Virus record (IMG/VR): IMGVR_UViG_3300010403_000705
Span: 368,845-432,844 of that record
Reading direction: 5' to 3' (one strand)
Length of the DNA: 64,000 nucleotides
Shown: positions 4,577 to 54,104 of the stretch, piece by piece
Layout: every line of letters begins with the position of its first letter
How positions within the stretch are numbered: position 1 is the first letter of the stretch
Made by a program: the position numbers and the translations under genes
Notes under the pieces: model-generated
Database searches by the model: none
What the model was told of the DNA's origin: nothing
What the model saw: the letters and a program-made list of their open reading frames with translations, nothing else

Positions 4577-4598
4577 GAAATCTTGATATATAAAAGCT

Positions 4599-4675
4599 TG
4601 GGATAGGTTATTAGTAAATGTAAATATTTCCCCTCCTTTTCTATTTACATTTATAGATGCCAGTAATTTATCCCA
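4599..4675 (+). ncRNA. Hairpin RNA with pyrimidine-only (anti-SD-like) loop
   Basis: TGGGATA/TATCCCA outer stem, 12-bp inner stem TAAATGTAAATA/TATTTACATTTA, loop TTTCCCCTCCTTTTC; lies just before tRNA-Leu. Confidence 0.55.
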
Positions 4676-4678
4676 TCT

Positions 4679-4762
4679 GGGCAGGTGGCGAAACTGGTAG
4701 ACGCAGCGTGCTTAAAACTCGCCGGATTAATCTCCGTAAGGGTTCGAATCCCTTCTTGCCCA
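4679..4762 (+). tRNA. tRNA-Leu(TAA)
   Basis: Cloverleaf, anticodon loop CTTAAAA, long variable arm, GGTTCGAATCC; CCA not encoded. Confidence 0.9.
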
Positions 4763-4802
4763 CTTATTCTTAATTTATTATTTTAAAGTAATCGAGTTTA
4801 TA

Positions 4803-4967
4803 ATGAAAAAAGTTATTGATTTTACTGATTGTAATATCAAGGATTGTAGACATCCCGAACACAACCCTCCTAATATGATTGTTTTATCCCCAGGCGTTTA
4901 TGAGCATAAATGCCCTCATTGTGGGCAACTACAACGAGTTATTATTCCATTAAAGCCAAGATTGTAA
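4803..4967 (+). CDS. Small Cys/His zinc-binding protein (54 aa)
   Basis: MKKVIDFTDCNIKDCRHPEHNPP...YEHKCPHCG; below the ORF-track cutoff. Confidence 0.6.
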   Translation: MKKVIDFTDCNIKDCRHPEHNPPNMIVLSPGVYEHKCPHCGQLQRVIIPLKPRL

Positions 4968-4974
4968 ATATACT

Positions 4975-6534
4975 ATGTATGAAACTAATTTAGCTGCCGT
5001 GCGACAATCCAAGCACCAAGAATTAAATAGTGGTGCTTATCCACTTGCTTCAGAAAGTGGAATGAAGATTAATCTGATCCTTGATCAGATCAATACCACT
5101 GCCCCAGCAATTTCTTTAGATCCTAGTGAATTAGGTGATATTATTACTGCACATGGTAGAATTACAGCTATTCGTAAGTCAGGTGGTATTACTTTTATAA
5201 AGATTTTTGATTCTACCGGCTCATTACAATTAATTGCCAGTCGATCAGTTTTACTTAATTATGAACAACTTAAGCTCTTAGATTTGGGAGATATAGTTGA
5301 AATTCAAGGTAAGATGTGTCGTTCAAAGACTAGTGAACCATCTCTTTTAATTATTCAATGGTCAGTACTCACTAAGTCACATCGCCCGCCACCCGAAAAA
5401 TATTTGGGTATTTCAAATGTTGAAACTAAGTATCGAAAGAGATATTTAGATCTCATGAGTTCTGATGAGAGCCGTGCTGTATTTACTATTAGGAGTTACA
5501 TTATACGTTCTCTACGTGAGTTCATGGAACGTAATAACTTCATGGAAATGGAAACTTCTACTCTAAACACTATAAATAGTGGAGCTAATGCTTTACCATT
5601 TATTACACGACATAATTATCTAGAAATAGATCTATTTTTACGTATTGCGCCAGAACTCTATCTCAAGAGATTGTTAGTCGGTGGATACGATAAGGTTTTT
5701 GAAATAGGTAGAAATTATAGAAATGAAGGCGTATCTACACGTCATAATCCAGAGTTTACTATGATGGAATTCTATGAAACCTACGGTAGGTTTCCAGATT
5801 TGATTTCCTACACCAAGGAAATGCTACTTTATGTTGATAATTATTTAGAAAATTTAAAGGGCAATTTTGCTTATTCATACTTCCAAGAATGGAAAAATAA
5901 GAGATCCTTTACTTTATCTGCATTCAAAGTAATTACCATGTCAGAAGCTGTTAACAATGCATGCGCTAAGTTTGGCGTGACTATTGACAACCTTGGTGTG
6001 CATATTAATGACATTGATAGTCTTCAGTCAAAGAAAATTGATATTAATAGTCTATTAAATGATTTAGAATCTTGCCCTTCACAAGGCAGATTGACATCAA
6101 TATTATTCGAGTATTTTGCTGAACCATTCTTAACAGAAGATTATCGAGAAACTATTAATGGCGTCTCATATTCTGTTCCAGTATTTATTACAGAATATCC
6201 AACAGAAATTTGTCCACTTGCTAGAAAGAATGATCAAAACCCTAATGTTTGTGATAGATTTGAGTTGTTTGTAGATGGCAGGGAGTTATGCAATGCATTC
6301 CAAGAATTGAATGATCCTAATGAACAGGCTAGTAGATTTCAAGAACAACTTGAATTAAATCAAAAAGATCCTATGGGTTATGATGAAGATTACATTGAAG
6401 CATTACAATATGGTATGCCACCATCAATTGGTTTTGGTATGGGAATAGATCGTTTAGTTATGTTATTAACTAATTCTACATCTATTAAGGATGTTATTTT
6501 GTTTCCTACATTAAAAAAGGTTAATAATGTCTAA
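4975..6534 (+). CDS. lysS: Lysine--tRNA ligase, class II
   Basis: OB-fold N-terminus, YRKRYLDL, LRIAPELYLKRL, YRNEGVSTRHNPEF, GMGIDRL, VILFP. Confidence 0.95.
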   Translation: MYETNLAAVRQSKHQELNSGAYPLASESGMKINLILDQINTTAPAISLDPSELGDIITAHGRITAIRKSGGITFIKIFDSTGSLQLIASRSVLLNYEQLKLLDLGDIVEIQGKMCRSKTSEPSLLIIQWSVLTKSHRPPPEKYLGISNVETKYRKRYLDLMSSDESRAVFTIRSYIIRSLREFMERNNFMEMETSTLNTINSGANALPFITRHNYLEIDLFLRIAPELYLKRLLVGGYDKVFEIGRNYRNEGVSTRHNPEFTMMEFYETYGRFPDLISYTKEMLLYVDNYLENLKGNFAYSYFQEWKNKRSFTLSAFKVITMSEAVNNACAKFGVTIDNLGVHINDIDSLQSKKIDINSLLNDLESCPSQGRLTSILFEYFAEPFLTEDYRETINGVSYSVPVFITEYPTEICPLARKNDQNPNVCDRFELFVDGRELCNAFQELNDPNEQASRFQEQLELNQKDPMGYDEDYIEALQYGMPPSIGFGMGIDRLVMLLTNSTSIKDVILFPTLKKVNNV

Positions 6535-25548: not shown

Positions 25549-25670
25549 TATTTATTTTTACTAGTGATTTTTGTTTAACAACTTTATAAAAAAATTAATT
25601 ACAATCAATAATTGTATTAGTCGAAGTAGTATTATTTACTTCACTTTTACTTAATATTAAAGATATTAAA

Positions 25671-26155: not shown

Positions 26156-26291
26156 TAAAATGGCAAAATTATGGTTTTTAAAGTTTAAAAAAGATAATCG
26201 ATGTTAAAAAAATAACTAGGACTAAGTTATATCATTATCATTAATTATCTGTTTATCGTTGAAATTTTTGTTCAAATATAAGGAATGTATT

Positions 26292-27851
26292 ATGTCTTCA
26301 AAAAAGTTATTTTCTAATAAGTCTGTGGATGTTAAGTTAGTTAAACCAACTGATACAGTAAATAATGCTGGTGGTCAAGCCTATTCTTTAGATGATAAGG
26401 CAGCCTTGGCTCAATTAGCCATGACGGGATGTTTCAATGGTACTTATTATGTTTCTGATGAAGATCAATTAAAAAAAGTATTAGATTTAGCAAATAAATT
26501 GCCAGCAAAATATGTTGCACAACTAGCTGTTTATTCTCGTCAATATGGTTTAATGAAAGATATGCCAGCAGTTTTGGCAGCGGTAGTGGCAGGTAAGGAT
26601 TCAGATCTTTTATCAAAAATTTTTGATAAGGTAGTAGATTCCCCCAAAATGTTAAGAAATTTTGTACAAATTCTTCGTTCAGGAGTAGTAGGTCGCAAAT
26701 CTTTAGGCACTAGACCTAAGAAATTGGTTCAAAAATACCTTGAATCTTTAACTGACGAACAATTATTTATGGCTGATGTTGGAAACGACCCATCTTTACA
26801 AGATGTAATTAAATTGGTTCATCCTAAACCAACTACCAAACAACGTTCTGCTATGTTTGCATATCTCTTAAATAAAGAATATTCCCAGGATGATTTATCT
26901 TTATTAGTAAGACAATTTGAGGACTTTAAAAAGGACATGTCCAAGGACATTCCTAATGTACCTTTTCAAAAATTAACTGCTTTACCACTTACTTCTGATC
27001 ATTGGAAAAAAATTGCTTCAAATGCCACTTGGAATCAAATCAGACAAAATCTTAATACATTCGCTCGTCATAATGTCTTAAGTGATCAGGCATTATTGAA
27101 TCTTATATGTTCTAGAATAGAGGATAAGGAATTAGTTAAAAGAGCTAGAGTATTTCCTTATCAGCTTTTTACCACGTTTCAAAATTTGGAATCAAGTATA
27201 CCAACTAAGATCTCAGTTGCTTTACAAAAAGCTGCTGAACATGCATTGGAAAATATTCCAGAATTTAAAGGTAAAGTCTATGTTATGGTAGATACTTCTG
27301 GTTCTATGAGTTCGCCAGTGACTGGTAAACGTGGTACAGCTACTACAAAAATGTCTTGCATTGATGTTGCTGCTTTAGTGGCGGCAGCTATAATGAGAAA
27401 AAATTCTGATGTAGAAGTATTACCTTTTGATACTAAAGTTCATACACATAAACTGAATCCACTTGATTCGATTATGACTAATGCAAAGATTTTATCTGCT
27501 TTTGGTGGAGGAGGTACGAATTGTTCTCTTCCATTACAAGAATTGAATCGTAGAAAAGCCATGGGAGATTTAGTTATTTATGTAAGTGATAATGAATCTT
27601 GGGTTGATTCTAGCAGAGGAAAGGGGACTGCAACTATGAATGCTTGGGAAGTTTTTAAAGCTCGTAATAGAAATGCAAAATTAGTTTGTATTGATTTGAC
27701 ACCCAATACTTCTACACAAGTTTATTCTAAAAAAGACGTTCTTAACATCGGAGGTTTCTCAGATTCTGTATTTGAAGTGATAAATAAGTTCATGGAGTAC
27801 GGAAATGACGCAAATCTATGGATTAGAACAATTGAGCAGATTAAACTTTAA
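26292..27851 (+). CDS. Ro60/Rsr TROVE-vWA RNA-binding protein
   Basis: NNAGGQAY, LAQLAMTGCFNGTYY, ARVFPYQL, VDTSGSM MIDAS, GGGGTNCS, SDNESW, IGGFSD. Confidence 0.92.
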   Translation: MSSKKLFSNKSVDVKLVKPTDTVNNAGGQAYSLDDKAALAQLAMTGCFNGTYYVSDEDQLKKVLDLANKLPAKYVAQLAVYSRQYGLMKDMPAVLAAVVAGKDSDLLSKIFDKVVDSPKMLRNFVQILRSGVVGRKSLGTRPKKLVQKYLESLTDEQLFMADVGNDPSLQDVIKLVHPKPTTKQRSAMFAYLLNKEYSQDDLSLLVRQFEDFKKDMSKDIPNVPFQKLTALPLTSDHWKKIASNATWNQIRQNLNTFARHNVLSDQALLNLICSRIEDKELVKRARVFPYQLFTTFQNLESSIPTKISVALQKAAEHALENIPEFKGKVYVMVDTSGSMSSPVTGKRGTATTKMSCIDVAALVAAAIMRKNSDVEVLPFDTKVHTHKLNPLDSIMTNAKILSAFGGGGTNCSLPLQELNRRKAMGDLVIYVSDNESWVDSSRGKGTATMNAWEVFKARNRNAKLVCIDLTPNTSTQVYSKKDVLNIGGFSDSVFEVINKFMEYGNDANLWIRTIEQIKL

Positions 27852-32481: not shown

Positions 32482-32558
32482 GGAGGAGTAGCTCAGTGAA
32501 AGAGCACGATGCTATAAACATAACGAGGTCCTTGGTTCAAGTCCAAGCTCTTCCACCA
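32482..32558 (+). ncRNA. tRNA-like RNA, bulged anticodon stem (nominal anticodon ATA)
   Basis: Intact acceptor, D and T arms and CCA; anticodon arm CGATG-CTATAAA-CAT-AA-CG. Confidence 0.65.
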
Positions 32559-32680: not shown

Positions 32681-32738
32681 ATGTTAGACCCAAATCACTA
32701 CACATAATAAAATATGCATAAATTGATATATAAATATT

Positions 32739-34255: not shown

Positions 34256-34364
34256 AGCAAGAATAGTTTAATGGTAGAACGCTGGAGTCCATCCAGAAGC
34301 GGTACAAAAAGAATCCACGTGCACTGGGTAAAAAAATTCTTAGGTTCAAATCCTCCTTCTTGCT
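34256..34364 (+). ncRNA. tRNA-shell RNA with enlarged variable region
   Basis: AGCAAGAA/TTCTTGCT, D arm TAGTTTAATGGTAGAAC, CTGGA-GTCCA-TCCAG, ~45-nt insert, AGGTTCAAATCCT. Confidence 0.6.
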
Positions 34365-36227: not shown

Positions 36228-36300
36228 CAGAATATGTGGTCTAAGGGCAGGGCAGGTGGAAGTGTTCATCACGTTCAGGTTCGATTCCTGACATATTCTG
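36228..36300 (+). ncRNA. tRNA-like RNA with shrunken anticodon loop
   Basis: CAGAATATG/CATATTCTG, TCAGG-TTCGATT-CCTGA; loop of 4-6 nt; no CCA. Confidence 0.6.
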
Positions 36301-37421: not shown

Positions 37422-37739
37422 ATGAATATTTCTCAATTATGCAAATTAGCAGACAAGTTTGAAGAAAAAATTAAATTAGCTACTGCTAGTAATAGTTGCT
37501 CACGTTGTAATGATATTCATTGTTGTATGAATTTTGGTAATTCTCATAGTCTAGATCAAGATAATAATGAGGCAAAATGTGAGGGTTACAAAAAATCTCC
37601 TGTAGGATCTCCGAGACAAAGATCTTTTTGTGCAAGACATTGTGCTATGAAAAAACAAAGAACTTCTATAGAAGTTGCAAATGATCCAGAATCTTGTATT
37701 AATAAAGGTTTAAGGCGTTGGAAATGCCGTTGTGGTTGA
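37422..37739 (+). CDS. DUF6321-like Cys-rich phage protein
   Basis: RQRSFCAR...DPESCINKGLRRWKC. Confidence 0.6.
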   Translation: MNISQLCKLADKFEEKIKLATASNSCSRCNDIHCCMNFGNSHSLDQDNNEAKCEGYKKSPVGSPRQRSFCARHCAMKKQRTSIEVANDPESCINKGLRRWKCRCG

Positions 37740-37769
37740 TATAAAACAACTACATAAATAGTGATATAT

Positions 37770-47070: not shown

Positions 47071-47438
47071 ATATAGTTGGTTAAGATAATCGCTGCCAAT
47101 TTTAATTGGGAGAGGAAGTTCCGAACACCAATAAAGCAGAGTGCCAGTTAACGGCTGGGTGCAGTGATGCAACTGAAAGTGTAACAGAAAATAAACCGCC
47201 TGTAAAGGTAAGGGTGAAATGGTGAAAAATGGCGAACTAAGAGTGCGCCATGTGTAAGAGACCACCGCATATTTGGTAACAAATATGGCAATACAAACCA
47301 CACTCGGTGCAAGACAAATAGAAAACGTTTGAGAATCGCTTATTCGATGTTTTCGGGTTGTTGCTTGATCCAAATAGTGATATTTGGACTAGATTAATGA
47401 TTATCCTAGACAGAATTCGGGCTACTTATTAACTATAT
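47071..47438 (+). ncRNA. rnpB: RNase P RNA (bacterial type A-like)
   Basis: GAGGAAGTTCCG(AAC), GAAAGTGTAACAGAAA, AGGGTGAAA, GTGCAAGAC, ACAGAATTCGGGCTA; P1 ATATAGTTGGT/ATTAACTATAT. Confidence 0.92.
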
Positions 47439-47472
47439 TTCTTTTATAAAAGTTATCTAAAACATCAATACC

Positions 47473-53189: not shown

Positions 53190-54104
53190 ATGTCATTTAA
53201 GTTTGCTACGTTAGTCGGCTGTGCCATTGGTGATGCTTTAGGTAATCCATTCGAAACAAAATTATCATCATATCAACCTTTACAAGATTGGGATGGAACC
53301 TTCAAAGAAGGTGGAACATTTTGGTGGGGTCAACCAGGACAATATACTGATGATACATTGATGAGTTTAGGATTAGCTAATAGTTTAGTTCGCTGTAAGG
53401 GTTTTGATCCAGTAGATGCTGCCCAAGAATATTTAGCTTGGTATAATTCAAAAAATACGCGAGGTATTGGCGGCACAACTGCTCGAGCTATGCATAACTT
53501 AAAACAAGGTATTCCTTGGACACATAGTGGGATTACTGGCGACACAATTGGTGGTAATGGTACAGCTATGAGGGTATCTCCATTAGGAATCGTTTACAAA
53601 AACGATATCTATAAGCTACTGCAATATGCCATACAAGACGCTCAAATTACTCATAATGCAATAGAGCCAAAGCTAGGATCAATGGCAGTTGCAATTGGCA
53701 CAGCTATGTTAGCGTCTGGTAAATTTTCTTCGATAGATGTGTTAGAAAAATTAATAGAGATGTTGGTAGATTCTATAGTCAAATCTAAATTACTTTTAGT
53801 ACAAGAACATTTGAAAAAAGGTAGCGAACATAAAGATGCATTATTAGAAATTGGATCTTCTGGTTATGTTCCAGAAACTGTTGGAGCTGCTTATTACTGT
53901 TTACTAGCAAATAATAATTTCAAAGACACAGTGATTATGGCAGTTAAAGCAGGTGGTGATACAGATACCACTGCTGCAATTGCTGGAGCTATGGCTGGCA
54001 CCTTATATGGTATAGATGTCATTCCAGATGAATATAAAAATGGAGTTGAAAATTTTGAAATGCTTTCTTCATTAGATGAAGAACTTACTAATATCTTGAT
54101 ATAA
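53190..54104 (+). CDS. ADP-ribosylglycohydrolase (DraG/ARH family)
   Basis: GCAIGDALG, YTDDT, GNGTAMR, ITH, GGDTDTTAAIAGA. Confidence 0.92.
   Translation: MSFKFATLVGCAIGDALGNPFETKLSSYQPLQDWDGTFKEGGTFWWGQPGQYTDDTLMSLGLANSLVRCKGFDPVDAAQEYLAWYNSKNTRGIGGTTARAMHNLKQGIPWTHSGITGDTIGGNGTAMRVSPLGIVYKNDIYKLLQYAIQDAQITHNAIEPKLGSMAVAIGTAMLASGKFSSIDVLEKLIEMLVDSIVKSKLLLVQEHLKKGSEHKDALLEIGSSGYVPETVGAAYYCLLANNNFKDTVIMAVKAGGDTDTTAAIAGAMAGTLYGIDVIPDEYKNGVENFEMLSSLDEELTNILI

What the first reader, a model, noticed from the sequence alone, without database searches (positions are those of the whole stretch)
4599..4675. Hairpin RNA displaying an anti-Shine-Dalgarno loop, releasable from pre-tRNA-Leu
Seen: a 77-nt hairpin with a 15-nt all-pyrimidine loop containing CCUCCUUU (4632-4639). 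It starts about 9 nt after a TGATATA motif and ends 3 nt before tRNA-Leu. Established: CCUCCU is the 16S 3' anti-SD core, and C-rich loops of sRNAs such as RNAIII block ribosome-binding sites. Inference: RNase P cleavage would free this leader as an SD-sequestering sRNA against host mRNAs. Alternatives are a pyrimidine-loop Y-like RNA, or an AGGAGG/GGA-loop CsrA sponge if the minus strand is transcribed.
Basis: partly seen in the sequence, partly recalled or inferred. Interest (0 to 1): 0.72.

Follow-up and report, generated by a model that had tools for sequence, protein, structure and literature searches.

The report
Conserved anti-SD-loop hairpin before phage tRNA-Leu
A 77-base RNA hairpin with an unpaired all-pyrimidine loop that resembles the ribosome's mRNA-docking sequence sits between a promoter and a leucine tRNA gene in a 430-kb soil phage. 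It is conserved in three other giant phages, so it is a real, undescribed phage RNA element whose function is still unproven.

Summary
Window 4599-4675 folds into a two-part hairpin (-21.8 kcal/mol, z -4.8). Its 15-nt loop UUUCCCCUCCUUUUC is fully unpaired.

- **Position.** The hairpin begins 8 nt after a TGATATA motif that behaves as this phage's promoter -10 element. It ends 3 nt before tRNA-Leu(UAA).
- **Homologues.** Three other giant IMG/VR phages (267-481 kb) carry the same layout: TGATATA, hairpin, 2-3 nt, tRNA-Leu, a small ORF, then lysyl-tRNA synthetase (~59% aa identity over the best segment).
- **Conservation.** Across the four copies the stems covary, with 6 pairs changed on both sides and 95% of cells paired. 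The loop is invariant in 14 of 15 columns, against 6 of 27 columns in the unpaired middle regions.
- **Known families.** No Rfam family matches the hairpin.

This is therefore a selected, sequence-specific RNA module, most likely the 5' leader of pre-tRNA-Leu that RNase P sets free.

Its function is not shown. An anti-Shine-Dalgarno, SD-pairing small RNA is the leading reading (about 0.3). Two rivals remain open: a Y-RNA-like partner of the phage's own Ro60/Rsr protein, and a cis-acting leader of the tRNA-Leu-lysS unit. The minus-strand CsrA-sponge idea is not supported.

The parts
4583..4592 (+). Promoter-like motif TTGATATATA (extended -10 type, TGnTATAnn). The predicted transcription start is about 4598-4600.
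   Evidence: TGATATA is enriched in intergenic DNA (38 of 90 sites, P=3e-8). It lies 1-26 nt upstream of 6 of the 31 tRNA genes that are not closely preceded by another tRNA (P=3e-7). The same motif sits at the same distance in homologues L196 and L211. In the sister strain, the invariant block starts right after variable position 4580.
4599..4675 (+). The conserved leader hairpin. Stem P1 is 4599-4612 with 4662-4675. Stem P2 is 4615-4626 with 4642-4653. The 3'-side internal loop is 4654-4661.
   Evidence: Fold z -4.78. Covariance models find each other's sequences: R1 finds G004 at E=6e-5, and R2 finds G000 at E=1.7e-4 as its only hit there. Covariation: 95% of cells paired, 6 pairs changed on both sides, and 0 of 500 shuffles reach the observed score. 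No Rfam match.
4627..4641 (+). The 15-nt all-pyrimidine loop UUUCCCCUCCUUUUC, with the anti-SD-like core CCUCCUUU at 4632-4639.
   Evidence: Unpaired probability about 1.00. 14 of 15 alignment columns are invariant in four phages, against 6 of 27 in the unpaired middle regions. Duplex energies with core SD sequences equal those of a 16S 3' tail.
4676..4678 (+). The 3-nt spacer UCU between the hairpin and the RNase P cleavage site.
   Evidence: Read from the sequence. The homologues have 2-3 nt spacers.
4679..4763 (+). tRNA-Leu(UAA). Its 5' maturation would release the hairpin.
   Evidence: ARAGORN and Rfam tRNA at 52.2 bits. The homologous loci carry tRNA-Leu(CAA), and the L211 copy starts and ends with nearly the same acceptor-end sequence.
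4803..4967 (+). A small 54-aa ORF with two Cys pairs (CxxxxC and CxxC), downstream of the tRNA with no terminator in between.
   Evidence: ORF list. Homologues occur in other phage contigs in different contexts.
4975..6534 (+). Lysyl-tRNA synthetase. It keeps its position downstream of the hairpin and tRNA-Leu module in the three related phages.
   Evidence: Pfam tRNA-synt_2 at 8.9e-79. tblastx and blastn show synteny with L206, L211 and L192.
26259..27851 (+). Phage Ro60/Rsr orthologue (530 aa). It is the candidate protein partner under the Y-RNA-like rival explanation.
   Evidence: phmmer against PDB finds D. radiodurans Rsr (2nvo) at E=1.6e-13 over residues 33-511, plus human and Xenopus Ro60. 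It is present at 68-81% identity in G003, G004 and G007 and absent from G001.
47073..47440 (+). Phage-encoded bacterial class A RNase P RNA, the ribozyme type that would cut at 4678/4679.
   Evidence: Rfam RF00010 at 247.5 bits, E=2.3e-79, full length. No RnpA protein gene is found in the phage.

Best explanation
The element is a conserved, phage-specific small-RNA module.

1. Transcription starts at a TGnTATA-type promoter, about 7-8 nt before or at the first base of the hairpin. The hairpin is therefore the whole 5' leader of pre-tRNA-Leu.
2. RNase P, either the host enzyme or one built on the phage's own RNase P RNA, cuts 3 nt after the hairpin.
3. This releases an RNA of about 80 nt. Its 5'-triphosphate end and its 3' end are locked together in a 14-bp stem, which should protect it from RNase E or RNase J attack and from 3' exonucleases.
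4. The RNA presents an invariant, unpaired 13-16 nt pyrimidine loop, UUUCCCCUCCUUU(U)CU. The loop contains the anti-Shine-Dalgarno core CCUCC. In the three relatives, CCUCCUUUCU is a 10-nt copy of the Bacillus-type 16S 3' tail as I recall it (own knowledge, not tested here).
5. The most likely mode of action is loop pairing with purine-rich, SD-like tracts (optimum AAAGGAGGGGAAA) on a limited set of strong-SD mRNAs. That pairing would block 30S binding, as the C-rich and anti-SD loops of known bacterial sRNAs do.

Shown: the structure, its conservation and covariation, the invariant loop, the promoter motif, and the adjacency to the tRNA. Inferred: the transcription start, release by RNase P, and stability. 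Hypothetical: SD pairing and its targets.
For: - **Structure and accessibility:**
- **Promoter motif statistics:**. The spacing between motif and hairpin is the same (7-8 nt) in the window, L196 and L211.
- **Long leader is unusual.** In the six other cases where TGATATA lies close upstream of a tRNA in this genome, only 1-26 nt separate the motif from the tRNA. Here the gap is 88 nt.
- **Family of four in orthologous loci:**
- **Covariation:** 6 pairs with changes on both sides, 95.2% of cells paired against 33-48% when the pairing partner is slid, and 0 of 500 shuffles reaching the observed score.
- **Conservation pattern:** the loop is invariant in 14 of 15 columns, while the P2 stem strands are invariant in only 1 of 5 columns each and the unpaired middle in 6 of 27.
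- **Sister strain:** in four other soil metagenomes it shows 0 changes over 4581-4739, while the flanks differ by about 5-13%.
- **SD pairing strength:** loop-SD duplex energies match those of the 16S tail for core SDs (GGAGG -8.5 against -8.7 kcal/mol).
- **Precedent:** anti-SD-loop sRNAs are an established class, the cuckoo RNAs with CCUCCUCCC loops (PMC4615179).
- **Translation investment:** the phage carries 39 tRNAs, a tmRNA, LysRS, bS21 and an RNase P RNA.
Against: - No expression data exist. No RNA run could be listed.
- The host is unknown, so no host target can be named.
- The phage's own genes use SD-like motifs. G is enriched at -11 to -7, and AGGA occurs upstream of 25% of ORFs. 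A general SD sponge would hit them too.
- The real loop binds phage translation-initiation regions no better than composition-matched shuffled loops (-5.69 against -5.81 +/- 0.33 kcal/mol).
- Loop-complementary 13-mers are not enriched in G000, G004 or G007 compared with a reversed-pattern control.
- SD pairing needs only CCUCC plus a few flanking bases. It does not explain why all 13 loop bases, and the 5' strand of the basal stem (13 of 16 columns), are invariant.
- There is one hairpin per genome, and stoichiometry argues against global SD sequestration.
- A rigid helix 3 nt from the cleavage site might slow RNase P (inference).
Confidence: 0.32

Rival explanations
1. Y-RNA-like partner of the phage Ro60/Rsr protein. 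The conserved basal stem would bind Rsr. The pyrimidine loop would act as the effector module, for example by contacting KH/S1 domains of PNPase as in the bacterial Rsr-Y RNA-PNPase complex. This would give the phage an RNA-degradation or quality-control particle.
For: - The phage encodes a full-length Ro60/Rsr orthologue.
- No Y_RNA or YrlA match exists anywhere in the 64-kb window, so Rsr has no other visible RNA partner.
- The element is 80-87 nt, with a long stem made from its 5' and 3' ends plus an internal loop. This fits the general description of Y RNAs as 80-130 nt with a long stem and a large internal loop (PMC4201824).
- The 5' strand of the basal stem is invariant in 13 of 16 columns, against 6 of 17 for the 3' strand. 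Ro60 mainly contacts the 5' strand (PMC4201824).
- Rsr is present in G003, G004 and G007. It is absent from G001, which also lacks the hairpin.
- Vertebrate Y RNAs carry pyrimidine-rich loops (own knowledge).
Against: - The Rsr-recognition motif GNCGAAN0-1G (or GGUCCGA) is absent from the hairpin (sequence; one search lists the motif only elsewhere).
- The hairpin lies 21.6 kb from rsr here and 25-27 kb away in G004 and G007. Known bacterial and phage Y RNAs are adjacent to rsr (PMC4201824).
- There is no internal tRNA-like domain.
- The 5'/3' strand asymmetry is largely explained by neutral C-to-U changes opposite G.
- Co-occurrence is confounded by shared ancestry, with only 4-5 genomes to compare.
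- The complex-prediction tool gave no verdict for a protein-RNA pair.
Confidence: 0.22
2. Cis-acting leader element of the tRNA-Leu, small ORF and lysS transcription unit. The promoter-proximal hairpin would act on its own transcript. It could protect the 5' end, set the timing of RNase P processing, bind a regulatory protein (an aminoacyl-tRNA synthetase or a phage factor), or modify RNA polymerase as the put RNAs of phage HK022 do. Any released RNA would be a by-product.
For: - The position immediately after the promoter, and the order hairpin, tRNA-Leu, small ORF, LysRS, are kept in all four phages.
- No terminator-like site was reported between the tRNA and LysRS.
- Other phage tRNAs also have small hairpins right after TGATATA or right before the tRNA. 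Examples are tRNA-Leu(UAG) at G000:21261 and tRNA-Gln in G001.
Against: - 5'-end protection or control of processing does not require an invariant 13-nt loop.
- No SD or other loop-complementary site exists in the downstream ORF leaders (sequence).
- RNase P cleavage separates the hairpin from the downstream mRNA.
- L206 tolerates a 27-nt insertion between the promoter and the hairpin. This argues against a strict requirement for distance from the polymerase or promoter.
Confidence: 0.22
3. Protein decoy. The loop would imitate the single-stranded 3' tail of 16S rRNA, or simply a pyrimidine tract. It would titrate a protein that binds such RNA, for example ribosomal protein bS1, the phage's own extended bS21, a hibernation factor, or a host nuclease or toxin aimed at the 16S tail.
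For: - Invariance of the full loop is typical of protein recognition.
- The phage encodes a bS21 with an N-terminal extension of about 38 aa.
- CCUCCUUUCU in the three relatives equals the 16S tail over 10 nt (plus own knowledge of 16S 3' ends).
Against: - There is no direct evidence.
- The bases 5' of CCUCC (UUUCC) differ from 16S (GAUCA).
- The window copy has an extra U.
- No partner protein has been identified.
Confidence: 0.12
4. RNase III processing site or transcript-end hairpin that separates the upstream mRNA from the tRNA, or the minus-strand reading (an AGGAGG/GGA loop acting as a CsrA sponge or ribosome-binding decoy).
For: - About 26 bp of stacked helix with an asymmetric internal loop resembles the RNase III sites of phage T7 (own knowledge).
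- The reverse complement displays AAAGGAGGGGAAA in a loop.
Against: - The promoter motif lies between the upstream stop codon (4576) and the hairpin, so the hairpin belongs to the tRNA transcript.
- No U-tract follows the hairpin, and the terminator scan does not list it.
- Loop invariance is irrelevant to RNase III.
- The phage has no RNase III and no CsrA.
- 337 of 372 long ORFs, the tRNA and the promoter are on the + strand.
- 10 of 84 paired cells are G-U, which would become A-C mismatches on the minus strand.
- A single GGA motif is not a CsrA sponge.
Confidence: 0.07

Closest known systems
Cuckoo (RSs0680/CcsR, SmelC397) sRNA family of Alphaproteobacteria (PMC4615179)
   Same: The hairpins display an anti-SD-like C/U-rich motif in an unpaired loop of 9-27 nt. 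The stems vary by compensatory change while the loop motif stays fixed. The presumed action is pairing with ribosome-binding sites.
   Different: Cuckoo RNAs have 2-4 adjacent hairpins of 24-50 nt, each carrying CCUCCUCCC. They are chromosomal, free-standing genes. Here there is one hairpin of 77-87 nt with the loop UUUCCCCUCCUUU, encoded by a phage and fused to a tRNA as its 5' leader.
tRNA-transcript-derived regulatory RNAs, such as the 3' external transcribed spacer of glyW-cysT-leuZ in E. coli (own knowledge; the literature search only lists reviews)
   Same: A functional small RNA made as a by-product of tRNA precursor processing.
   Different: That RNA is a 3' trailer released by RNase E and acts as a sponge for sRNAs. 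Here the RNA is a 5' leader released by RNase P, with a conserved structured loop. No stable, functional 5'-leader RNA is known to me.
Phage T4 species 1 and species 2 stable RNAs (rnaC, rnaD), encoded in the tRNA gene cluster (own knowledge)
   Same: Small stable phage RNAs that are co-transcribed and co-processed with phage tRNAs. Their function is still unknown.
   Different: No sequence or structural similarity was tested or is expected. The T4 RNAs are about 120-140 nt and lie at the 3' side of the cluster.
Y RNAs / YrlA, partners of Ro60/Rsr (PMC4201824)
   Same: Size class, a long stem made from both ends, an internal loop, association with tRNA-like sequence, and presence of an Rsr gene in the same genome.
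   Different: There is no GNCGAAN0-1G motif and no embedded tRNA-like domain. The hairpin lies 22-27 kb from rsr, and no Rfam Y_RNA or YrlA match is found.
C-rich-loop sRNAs of Firmicutes (RNAIII UCCC loops, RsaE/RoxS)
   Same: Unpaired C-rich loops that pair with G-rich SD regions.
   Different: Those motifs are short (UCCC) and usually present in several copies on free-standing host sRNAs. Here the motif is a single 13-nt invariant loop.

Membership tests
Cuckoo / CcsR anti-SD-loop sRNAs | 2 to 4 adjacent hairpins, each 24-50 nt | tested here: not met
   There is a single hairpin of 77 nt (81-87 nt in the relatives).
Cuckoo / CcsR anti-SD-loop sRNAs | Loop motif CCUCCUCCC in a loop of 9-27 nt | tested here: not met
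   The loop is 14-16 nt but reads UUUCCCCUCCUUU(U)C. It contains CCUCC, not CCUCCUCCC.
Cuckoo / CcsR anti-SD-loop sRNAs | Stems vary by compensatory change while the loop motif is fixed | tested here: met
   6 pairs changed on both sides, and the loop is invariant in 14 of 15 columns.
Y RNA / YrlA | Ro60/Rsr gene in the same genome | tested here: met
   Window 26259-27851 matches Rsr 2nvo at E=1.6e-13.
Y RNA / YrlA | Rsr-recognition motif GNCGAAN0-1G (GGUCCGA in vertebrates) near the 5' end | tested here: not met
   The 5' strand reads UUGGGAUAGG(U/C)U in all four members. The motif scan finds it only at 25620, 34369 and 36547.
Y RNA / YrlA | Encoded next to rsr (within a few kb) | tested here: not met
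   The distance is 21.6 kb here and 25-27 kb in G004 and G007.
Y RNA / YrlA | Embedded tRNA-like domain (T and D arms), matched by the Rfam models | tested here: not met
   No Y_RNA or YrlA hit at E<=5-10. The tRNA lies outside the stem.
Y RNA / YrlA | Physical binding to Ro60/Rsr | not testable with these tools
   Complex prediction gave no verdict for a protein-RNA pair.
tRNA-precursor-derived small RNA (leader or spacer released by processing) | Lies within a tRNA transcription unit, between the promoter and the mature tRNA end | tested here: met
   A promoter-like motif lies 8 nt upstream and the tRNA 3 nt downstream, with the same layout in three homologues.
tRNA-precursor-derived small RNA (leader or spacer released by processing) | Accumulates as a discrete RNA after processing | not testable with these tools
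   No RNA sequencing run could be listed.
CsrA/RsmA sponge (CsrB/RsmZ type) | Multiple GGA motifs in hairpin loops, and CsrA present | tested here: not met
   There is one GGA-containing loop, and only on the minus strand. No CsrA gene is found in the phage. The context is on the + strand.
Intrinsic terminator | GC-rich stem, short loop, and a U-tract after the stem | tested here: not met
   The stem is AU-rich, the loop is 15 nt, and the hairpin is followed by UCUGGGC. The terminator scan does not list it.
Any Rfam 15 family | Covariance-model match | tested here: not met
   No match to the hairpin in the window or in the three homologues, even at E<=1-10.

The most novel reading that the evidence does not exclude
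Giant soil phages make a dedicated, RNase P-released 5'-leader RNA whose invariant loop imitates the 3' tail of 16S rRNA. They would use it to reprogramme translation initiation during infection. It could work by occupying strong SD sites on host mRNAs, or by titrating a factor that binds the 16S tail, possibly together with the phage's own bS21. It would be the first functional 5'-leader-derived sRNA and the first RNA mimic of the anti-SD sequence used by a virus.
Probability: 0.2. Interest if true: 0.85.

Novelty: new variant of a known kind. Interest (0 to 1): 0.62.

Why it matters
Giant phages carry many translation genes, and how they use them is an open question. This element is a small, well-defined RNA under strong selection. 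It sits at the head of a tRNA and aminoacyl-tRNA-synthetase unit in phages that also encode bS21, a tmRNA, an RNase P RNA and Ro60.

If the loop acts on SD sequences or on 16S-tail-binding factors, it would be a new way for a virus to bias translation initiation. It would also be the first case of a tRNA 5' leader with a function of its own. If instead it is the RNA partner of phage Ro60, it would define a Y-RNA class that current models miss.

Either way the four-member alignment gives a concrete object to test: a loop, a stem, and compensatory mutants.

Tried and rejected
- **Searches with neighbouring proteins.** The 162-aa and 85-aa upstream ORFs have no relatives in IMG/VR, and the 162-aa ORF has none in the 5.8-billion-protein set. 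LysRS searches gave only a 59% relative without the tRNA or hairpin (L002/G001 and L006). Homologues of the 54-aa ORF lie in unrelated contexts.
- **Exact-sequence searches.** An exact 20-mer from the loop and 3' stem found nothing. An exact 25-mer from the tRNA found an unrelated phage with interrupted tRNAs (L004).
- **What did work.** The DUF6915 neighbour led to closer relatives. Searching their whole records with a single-sequence covariance model found the first homologue.
- **Spurious covariance-model hits.** G001:181966 and G003:341874 have no pyrimidine loop and no tRNA.
- **G003 cannot be scored.** It is the closest relative by Rsr and DUF6915. Its IMG/VR record ends at the stop codon of the ORF85 homologue, just before the place where the hairpin would be.
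- **Expression.** No RNA runs were listed.
- **Protein-RNA complex prediction.** The job was not folded.
- **Targets in the phage.** No outlier stands out among phage translation-initiation regions, and complementary sites are not enriched. The best site, AAAGGAGGUGAAA, lies inside the bS21 ORF and is within chance expectation.
- **Pairing with RNase P RNA or tmRNA.** Pairing is weak at -12.8 and -8.3 kcal/mol and was not pursued.
- **Readings rejected.**
  - The hairpin is not a degenerate tRNA, despite its 77-nt length and 3-nt spacing. It has no T or D arm features and no ARAGORN or Rfam hit.
  - It is not a T-box or a synthetase operator. There is no Rfam hit, and it is separated from lysS by the tRNA.
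- **Host inference.** LysRS gives only a weak lead towards Pseudomonadota and Desulfuromonadales at 40-46% identity.
Full report
**Context.** The window is the last 64 kb of a 432,844-bp IMG/VR virus record (G000:368845-432844, CheckV 97% complete). That record was cut from a 447,633-bp soil-metagenome contig (soil origin). The genome is 33% G+C, and 337 of its 372 long ORFs lie on the + strand. It encodes 39 tRNAs and a tmRNA. It also encodes a class A RNase P RNA, a lysyl-tRNA synthetase just downstream of the finding, ribosomal protein bS21 and a Ro60/Rsr orthologue.

**The observation.**
- TGATATA lies at 4584-4590.
- The hairpin occupies 4599-4675.
- A UCU spacer follows at 4676-4678.
- tRNA-Leu(UAA) lies at 4679-4763.

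The 77-nt sequence folds to -21.8 kcal/mol. Shuffles average -10.3 +/- 2.4, giving z -4.78, and 0 of 200 shuffles fold as well. The fold is independent of the tRNA in the joint fold.

The anatomy is as follows.
- A 14-bp basal stem with three G-U pairs.
- An asymmetric internal loop (2 nt on the 5' side, 8 nt on the 3' side).
- A 12-bp upper stem.
- A 15-nt loop, UUUCCCCUCCUUUUC (4627-4641). Every loop base has an unpaired probability of about 1.00.

Stable hairpins are not rare in this genome. Of 16,051 GC-matched windows, 85 fold at least as well, and most of those look like terminators. Several features set this one apart. It is the only long-stem hairpin on the + strand with CCUCC in the loop. 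Its pyrimidine run is one of 10 runs of 15 nt or more in 433 kb. It is single-copy. No Rfam family matches it, even at E<=10.

**The promoter.**
- TGATATA occurs 90 times on the + strand. Of these, 38 are intergenic, against 17% expected (P=3e-8).
- The motif typically lies 4-49 nt before a start codon.
- It lies within 40 nt upstream of 6 of the 31 tRNA genes that are not closely preceded by another tRNA, against 0.26 expected (P=3e-7).
- In those cases only 1-26 nt separate the motif from the tRNA. Only at this tRNA-Leu is the gap 88 nt, and the hairpin fills it.
- In the relatives the motif reads TGATATATT or TGATATAGT, an extended -10 element of the form TGnTATAnT.
- A start 7-8 nt downstream of that element falls on the first bases of the hairpin. 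The hairpin is therefore, by inference, the complete 5' leader of pre-tRNA-Leu.

**Sister strain.** Contigs from four other soil metagenomes carry a strain that differs from the window at about 5% of positions in the flanks, and at up to 13% in the upstream ORF. No difference falls in 4581-4739. That block covers the promoter motif, the hairpin and the tRNA (records 11, 18 and 24). The nearest listed variable positions are 4580 and 4859. At 5-6.5% divergence, zero changes in 77-98 nt has a probability of roughly 0.001-0.02 (my arithmetic).

**Homologues.** Searches with the immediate neighbours failed. The DUF6915 gene 0.8 kb upstream led to closer relatives.
- A covariance model built from the window sequence alone (R1) found one hit in the 267-kb phage G004 at E=6.4e-5. 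That hit lies immediately upstream of a tRNA-Leu(CAA) and 8 nt after TGATATA.
- A pattern made from the 5' stem and the loop found the same element in two more giant phages, L206/G007 (481 kb) and L211 (340 kb). The other 22 matches were chance hits with no tRNA next to them.
- A second pattern, loop plus the 5' part of a tRNA-Leu, returned only these three loci and no chance hits.
- A model built from the three relatives without the window sequence (R2) finds the window's hairpin as its only hit in G000 (32.8 bits, E=1.7e-4).

The loci are orthologous. The 379-aa membrane protein lies upstream, and LysRS lies downstream at about 59% amino-acid identity over the best aligned segment. At that divergence the spacers on either side cannot be aligned. 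The tRNA has switched anticodon (UAA here, CAA there). The L211 copy starts and ends with nearly the same sequence as the window's. A more distant relative, G001, has LysRS at 59% identity but has neither the tRNA nor the hairpin. G003 cannot be scored because its record stops at the stop codon just before the expected position.

**Structure and selection.** These counts come from the model-fitted four-sequence alignment A6, which leans towards the structure.
- 95.2% of cells form standard pairs, against 33-48% when the 3' partners are slid by 1-3 columns.
- Six pairs carry changes on both sides, against 0-2 in the slid controls.
- None of 500 shuffles reaches the observed covariation score.
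- The upper stem has been rewritten entirely. It reads UAAAUGUAAAUA/UAUUUACAUUUA here, against GGGUA/UGCCC or ACUAAGGUA/UGCCUUGGU in the relatives.
- Invariant columns:

| Region | Invariant columns |
|---|---|
| Loop | 14 of 15 (the other column is a one-U indel) |
| Basal stem, 5' strand | 13 of 16 |
| Basal stem, 3' strand | 6 of 17 |
| Each upper-stem strand | 1 of 5 |
| Unpaired middle regions | 6 of 27 |

If about 22% of unconstrained columns are invariant, a loop with 14 of 15 invariant columns has a chance probability of the order of 1e-8 (my arithmetic). Selection therefore acts on an RNA hairpin that must display one particular 13-nt sequence. Much of the asymmetry between the two basal-stem strands reflects neutral C-to-U changes opposite G. 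I do not read protein binding into it with confidence.

**Strand.** The promoter, the tRNA, the gene orientation and 10 G-U cells out of 84 all point to the + strand. Minimum free energies of the two strands do not discriminate. The minus-strand reading has no promoter match of the phage type. It has one GGA motif, and the phage has no CsrA.

**Mechanism.** I consider three steps likely.
1. Transcription starts at the hairpin's first bases.
2. RNase P cuts at 4678/4679. The phage even carries an RNase P RNA at 47073-47440, but no RnpA protein gene.
3. An RNA of about 80 nt is released with a paired triphosphate 5' end and a 3-nt 3' overhang, a shape that should resist the usual decay routes.

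The function of the loop is open.

*SD pairing.* The loop contains CCUCC. In the three relatives it contains CCUCCUUUCU, which matches the Bacillus-type 16S 3' end as I recall it (own knowledge). The loop binds core SD sequences as well as a 16S tail does. sRNAs with anti-SD or C-rich loops are an established class (PMC4615179).

Several observations count against a global sponge.
- The phage's own genes show SD-like motifs.
- The loop pairs with phage initiation regions no better than shuffled pyrimidine loops.
- Complementary 13-mers are not enriched in the phage genomes.
- SD pairing does not explain why all 13 loop bases are fixed.

A narrower set of host targets remains possible, but it cannot be examined without the host.

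*Y-RNA-like partner of Rsr.* The phage Rsr is well conserved (68-81% identity in G003, G004 and G007) and is missing from hairpin-less G001. No canonical Y RNA is detectable in the window. The size and overall shape fit. However, the recognition motif, the adjacency to rsr and the tRNA-like domain are all absent.

*Cis-acting leader.* The conserved order hairpin, tRNA-Leu, small ORF, lysS also allows a cis-acting leader function.

I rank SD pairing first at about 0.3. The Y-like and cis readings each sit a little above 0.2.

**Comparison and novelty.** The element works like, but is not a member of, the cuckoo/CcsR family. It has one long hairpin where that family has 2-4 short ones, and its motif differs. 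It resembles tRNA-spacer-derived sRNAs in its origin, but it is a 5' leader. It recalls the unexplained T4 species 1 and 2 RNAs that are co-transcribed with tRNAs. It matches no Rfam family. I class it as a new variant of a known kind: a new, small RNA family restricted so far to a clade of giant soil phages.

**Limits.** There are only four sequences, three of them fairly close to each other. There are no expression data, the host is unknown, and there is no binding test. The transcription start and the RNase P release are inferences.

Noticed in passing
window 26259-27851 (+): The phage encodes a Ro60/Rsr (TROVE) orthologue of 530 aa. It matches D. radiodurans Rsr (2nvo) at E=1.6e-13 and human and Xenopus Ro60. 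It is conserved at 68-81% identity in relatives G003, G004 and G007. No Y_RNA or YrlA match is found anywhere in the window, so its RNA partner is unidentified.
   Followed up: partly
window 47073-47440 (+): A full-length bacterial class A RNase P RNA is encoded by the phage (Rfam RF00010, 247.5 bits). No RnpA protein gene is found in the genome.
   Followed up: partly
whole genome; examples at window 32723-32730, 37736-37743 and 54096-54103: The TGATATA motif (often tcTTGATATA) behaves as the phage's promoter -10 element. It is enriched in intergenic DNA and lies just upstream of tRNAs and about 4-49 nt before start codons.
   Followed up: yes
G000:76571-76900 (outside the window; L097:1384-1713): A bS21 gene carries an N-terminal extension of about 38 aa. 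Inside that extension lies AAAGGAGGUGAAA, a perfect extended SD with no start codon after it. It is also the best (12 of 13) complement of the hairpin loop in the genome. A 13-mer identical to it occurs in G003.
   Followed up: partly
G000:55645-55997 and G000:58637 (outside the window): There is a tmRNA with tag ANDNAFVPMAQAA; relative G001 has ANDNAFAPMALAA. A tRNA with anticodon CUA, which ARAGORN labels Pyl, is a possible amber suppressor.
   Followed up: no
G000:250000-280000 (outside the window): G+C jumps to 45-52% and then stays at 36-39% up to about 350 kb, against about 30% elsewhere. This could be a mosaic module, a recent acquisition or an assembly chimera.
   Followed up: no
window 34257-34364, 36229-36300 and 32482-32558: Three odd tRNA-like genes. 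One is a 108-nt Rfam tRNA match with an insertion of about 35 nt that ARAGORN misses. One is a 'tRNA-???' with a 2-base anticodon. One is a tRNA-Tyr with anticodon AUA.
   Followed up: no
G003:1 (L227) and the G000 record ends: IMG/VR 'provirus' trimming ends record G003 at the stop codon just before the expected hairpin and tRNA-Leu. G000 itself is 14.8 kb shorter than its metagenome contig. These giant phages are probably not proviruses, and the trimming removes real phage sequence.
   Followed up: partly
L004:1020-1260 (IMGVR_UViG_3300003322_000571, 350 kb): An unrelated giant phage has tRNA-like genes whose 5' and 3' halves are separated by insertions of 100-150 nt, possibly introns.
   Followed up: no
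G000:21236-21260 and L085:1574-1600 (- strand): Other phage tRNAs also have small hairpins in their leaders. One is AGACUAU-AAAUA-AUAGUCU, right after TGATATA and before tRNA-Leu(UAG). Another is a 9-bp hairpin 1 nt before tRNA-Gln in relative G001.
   Followed up: no
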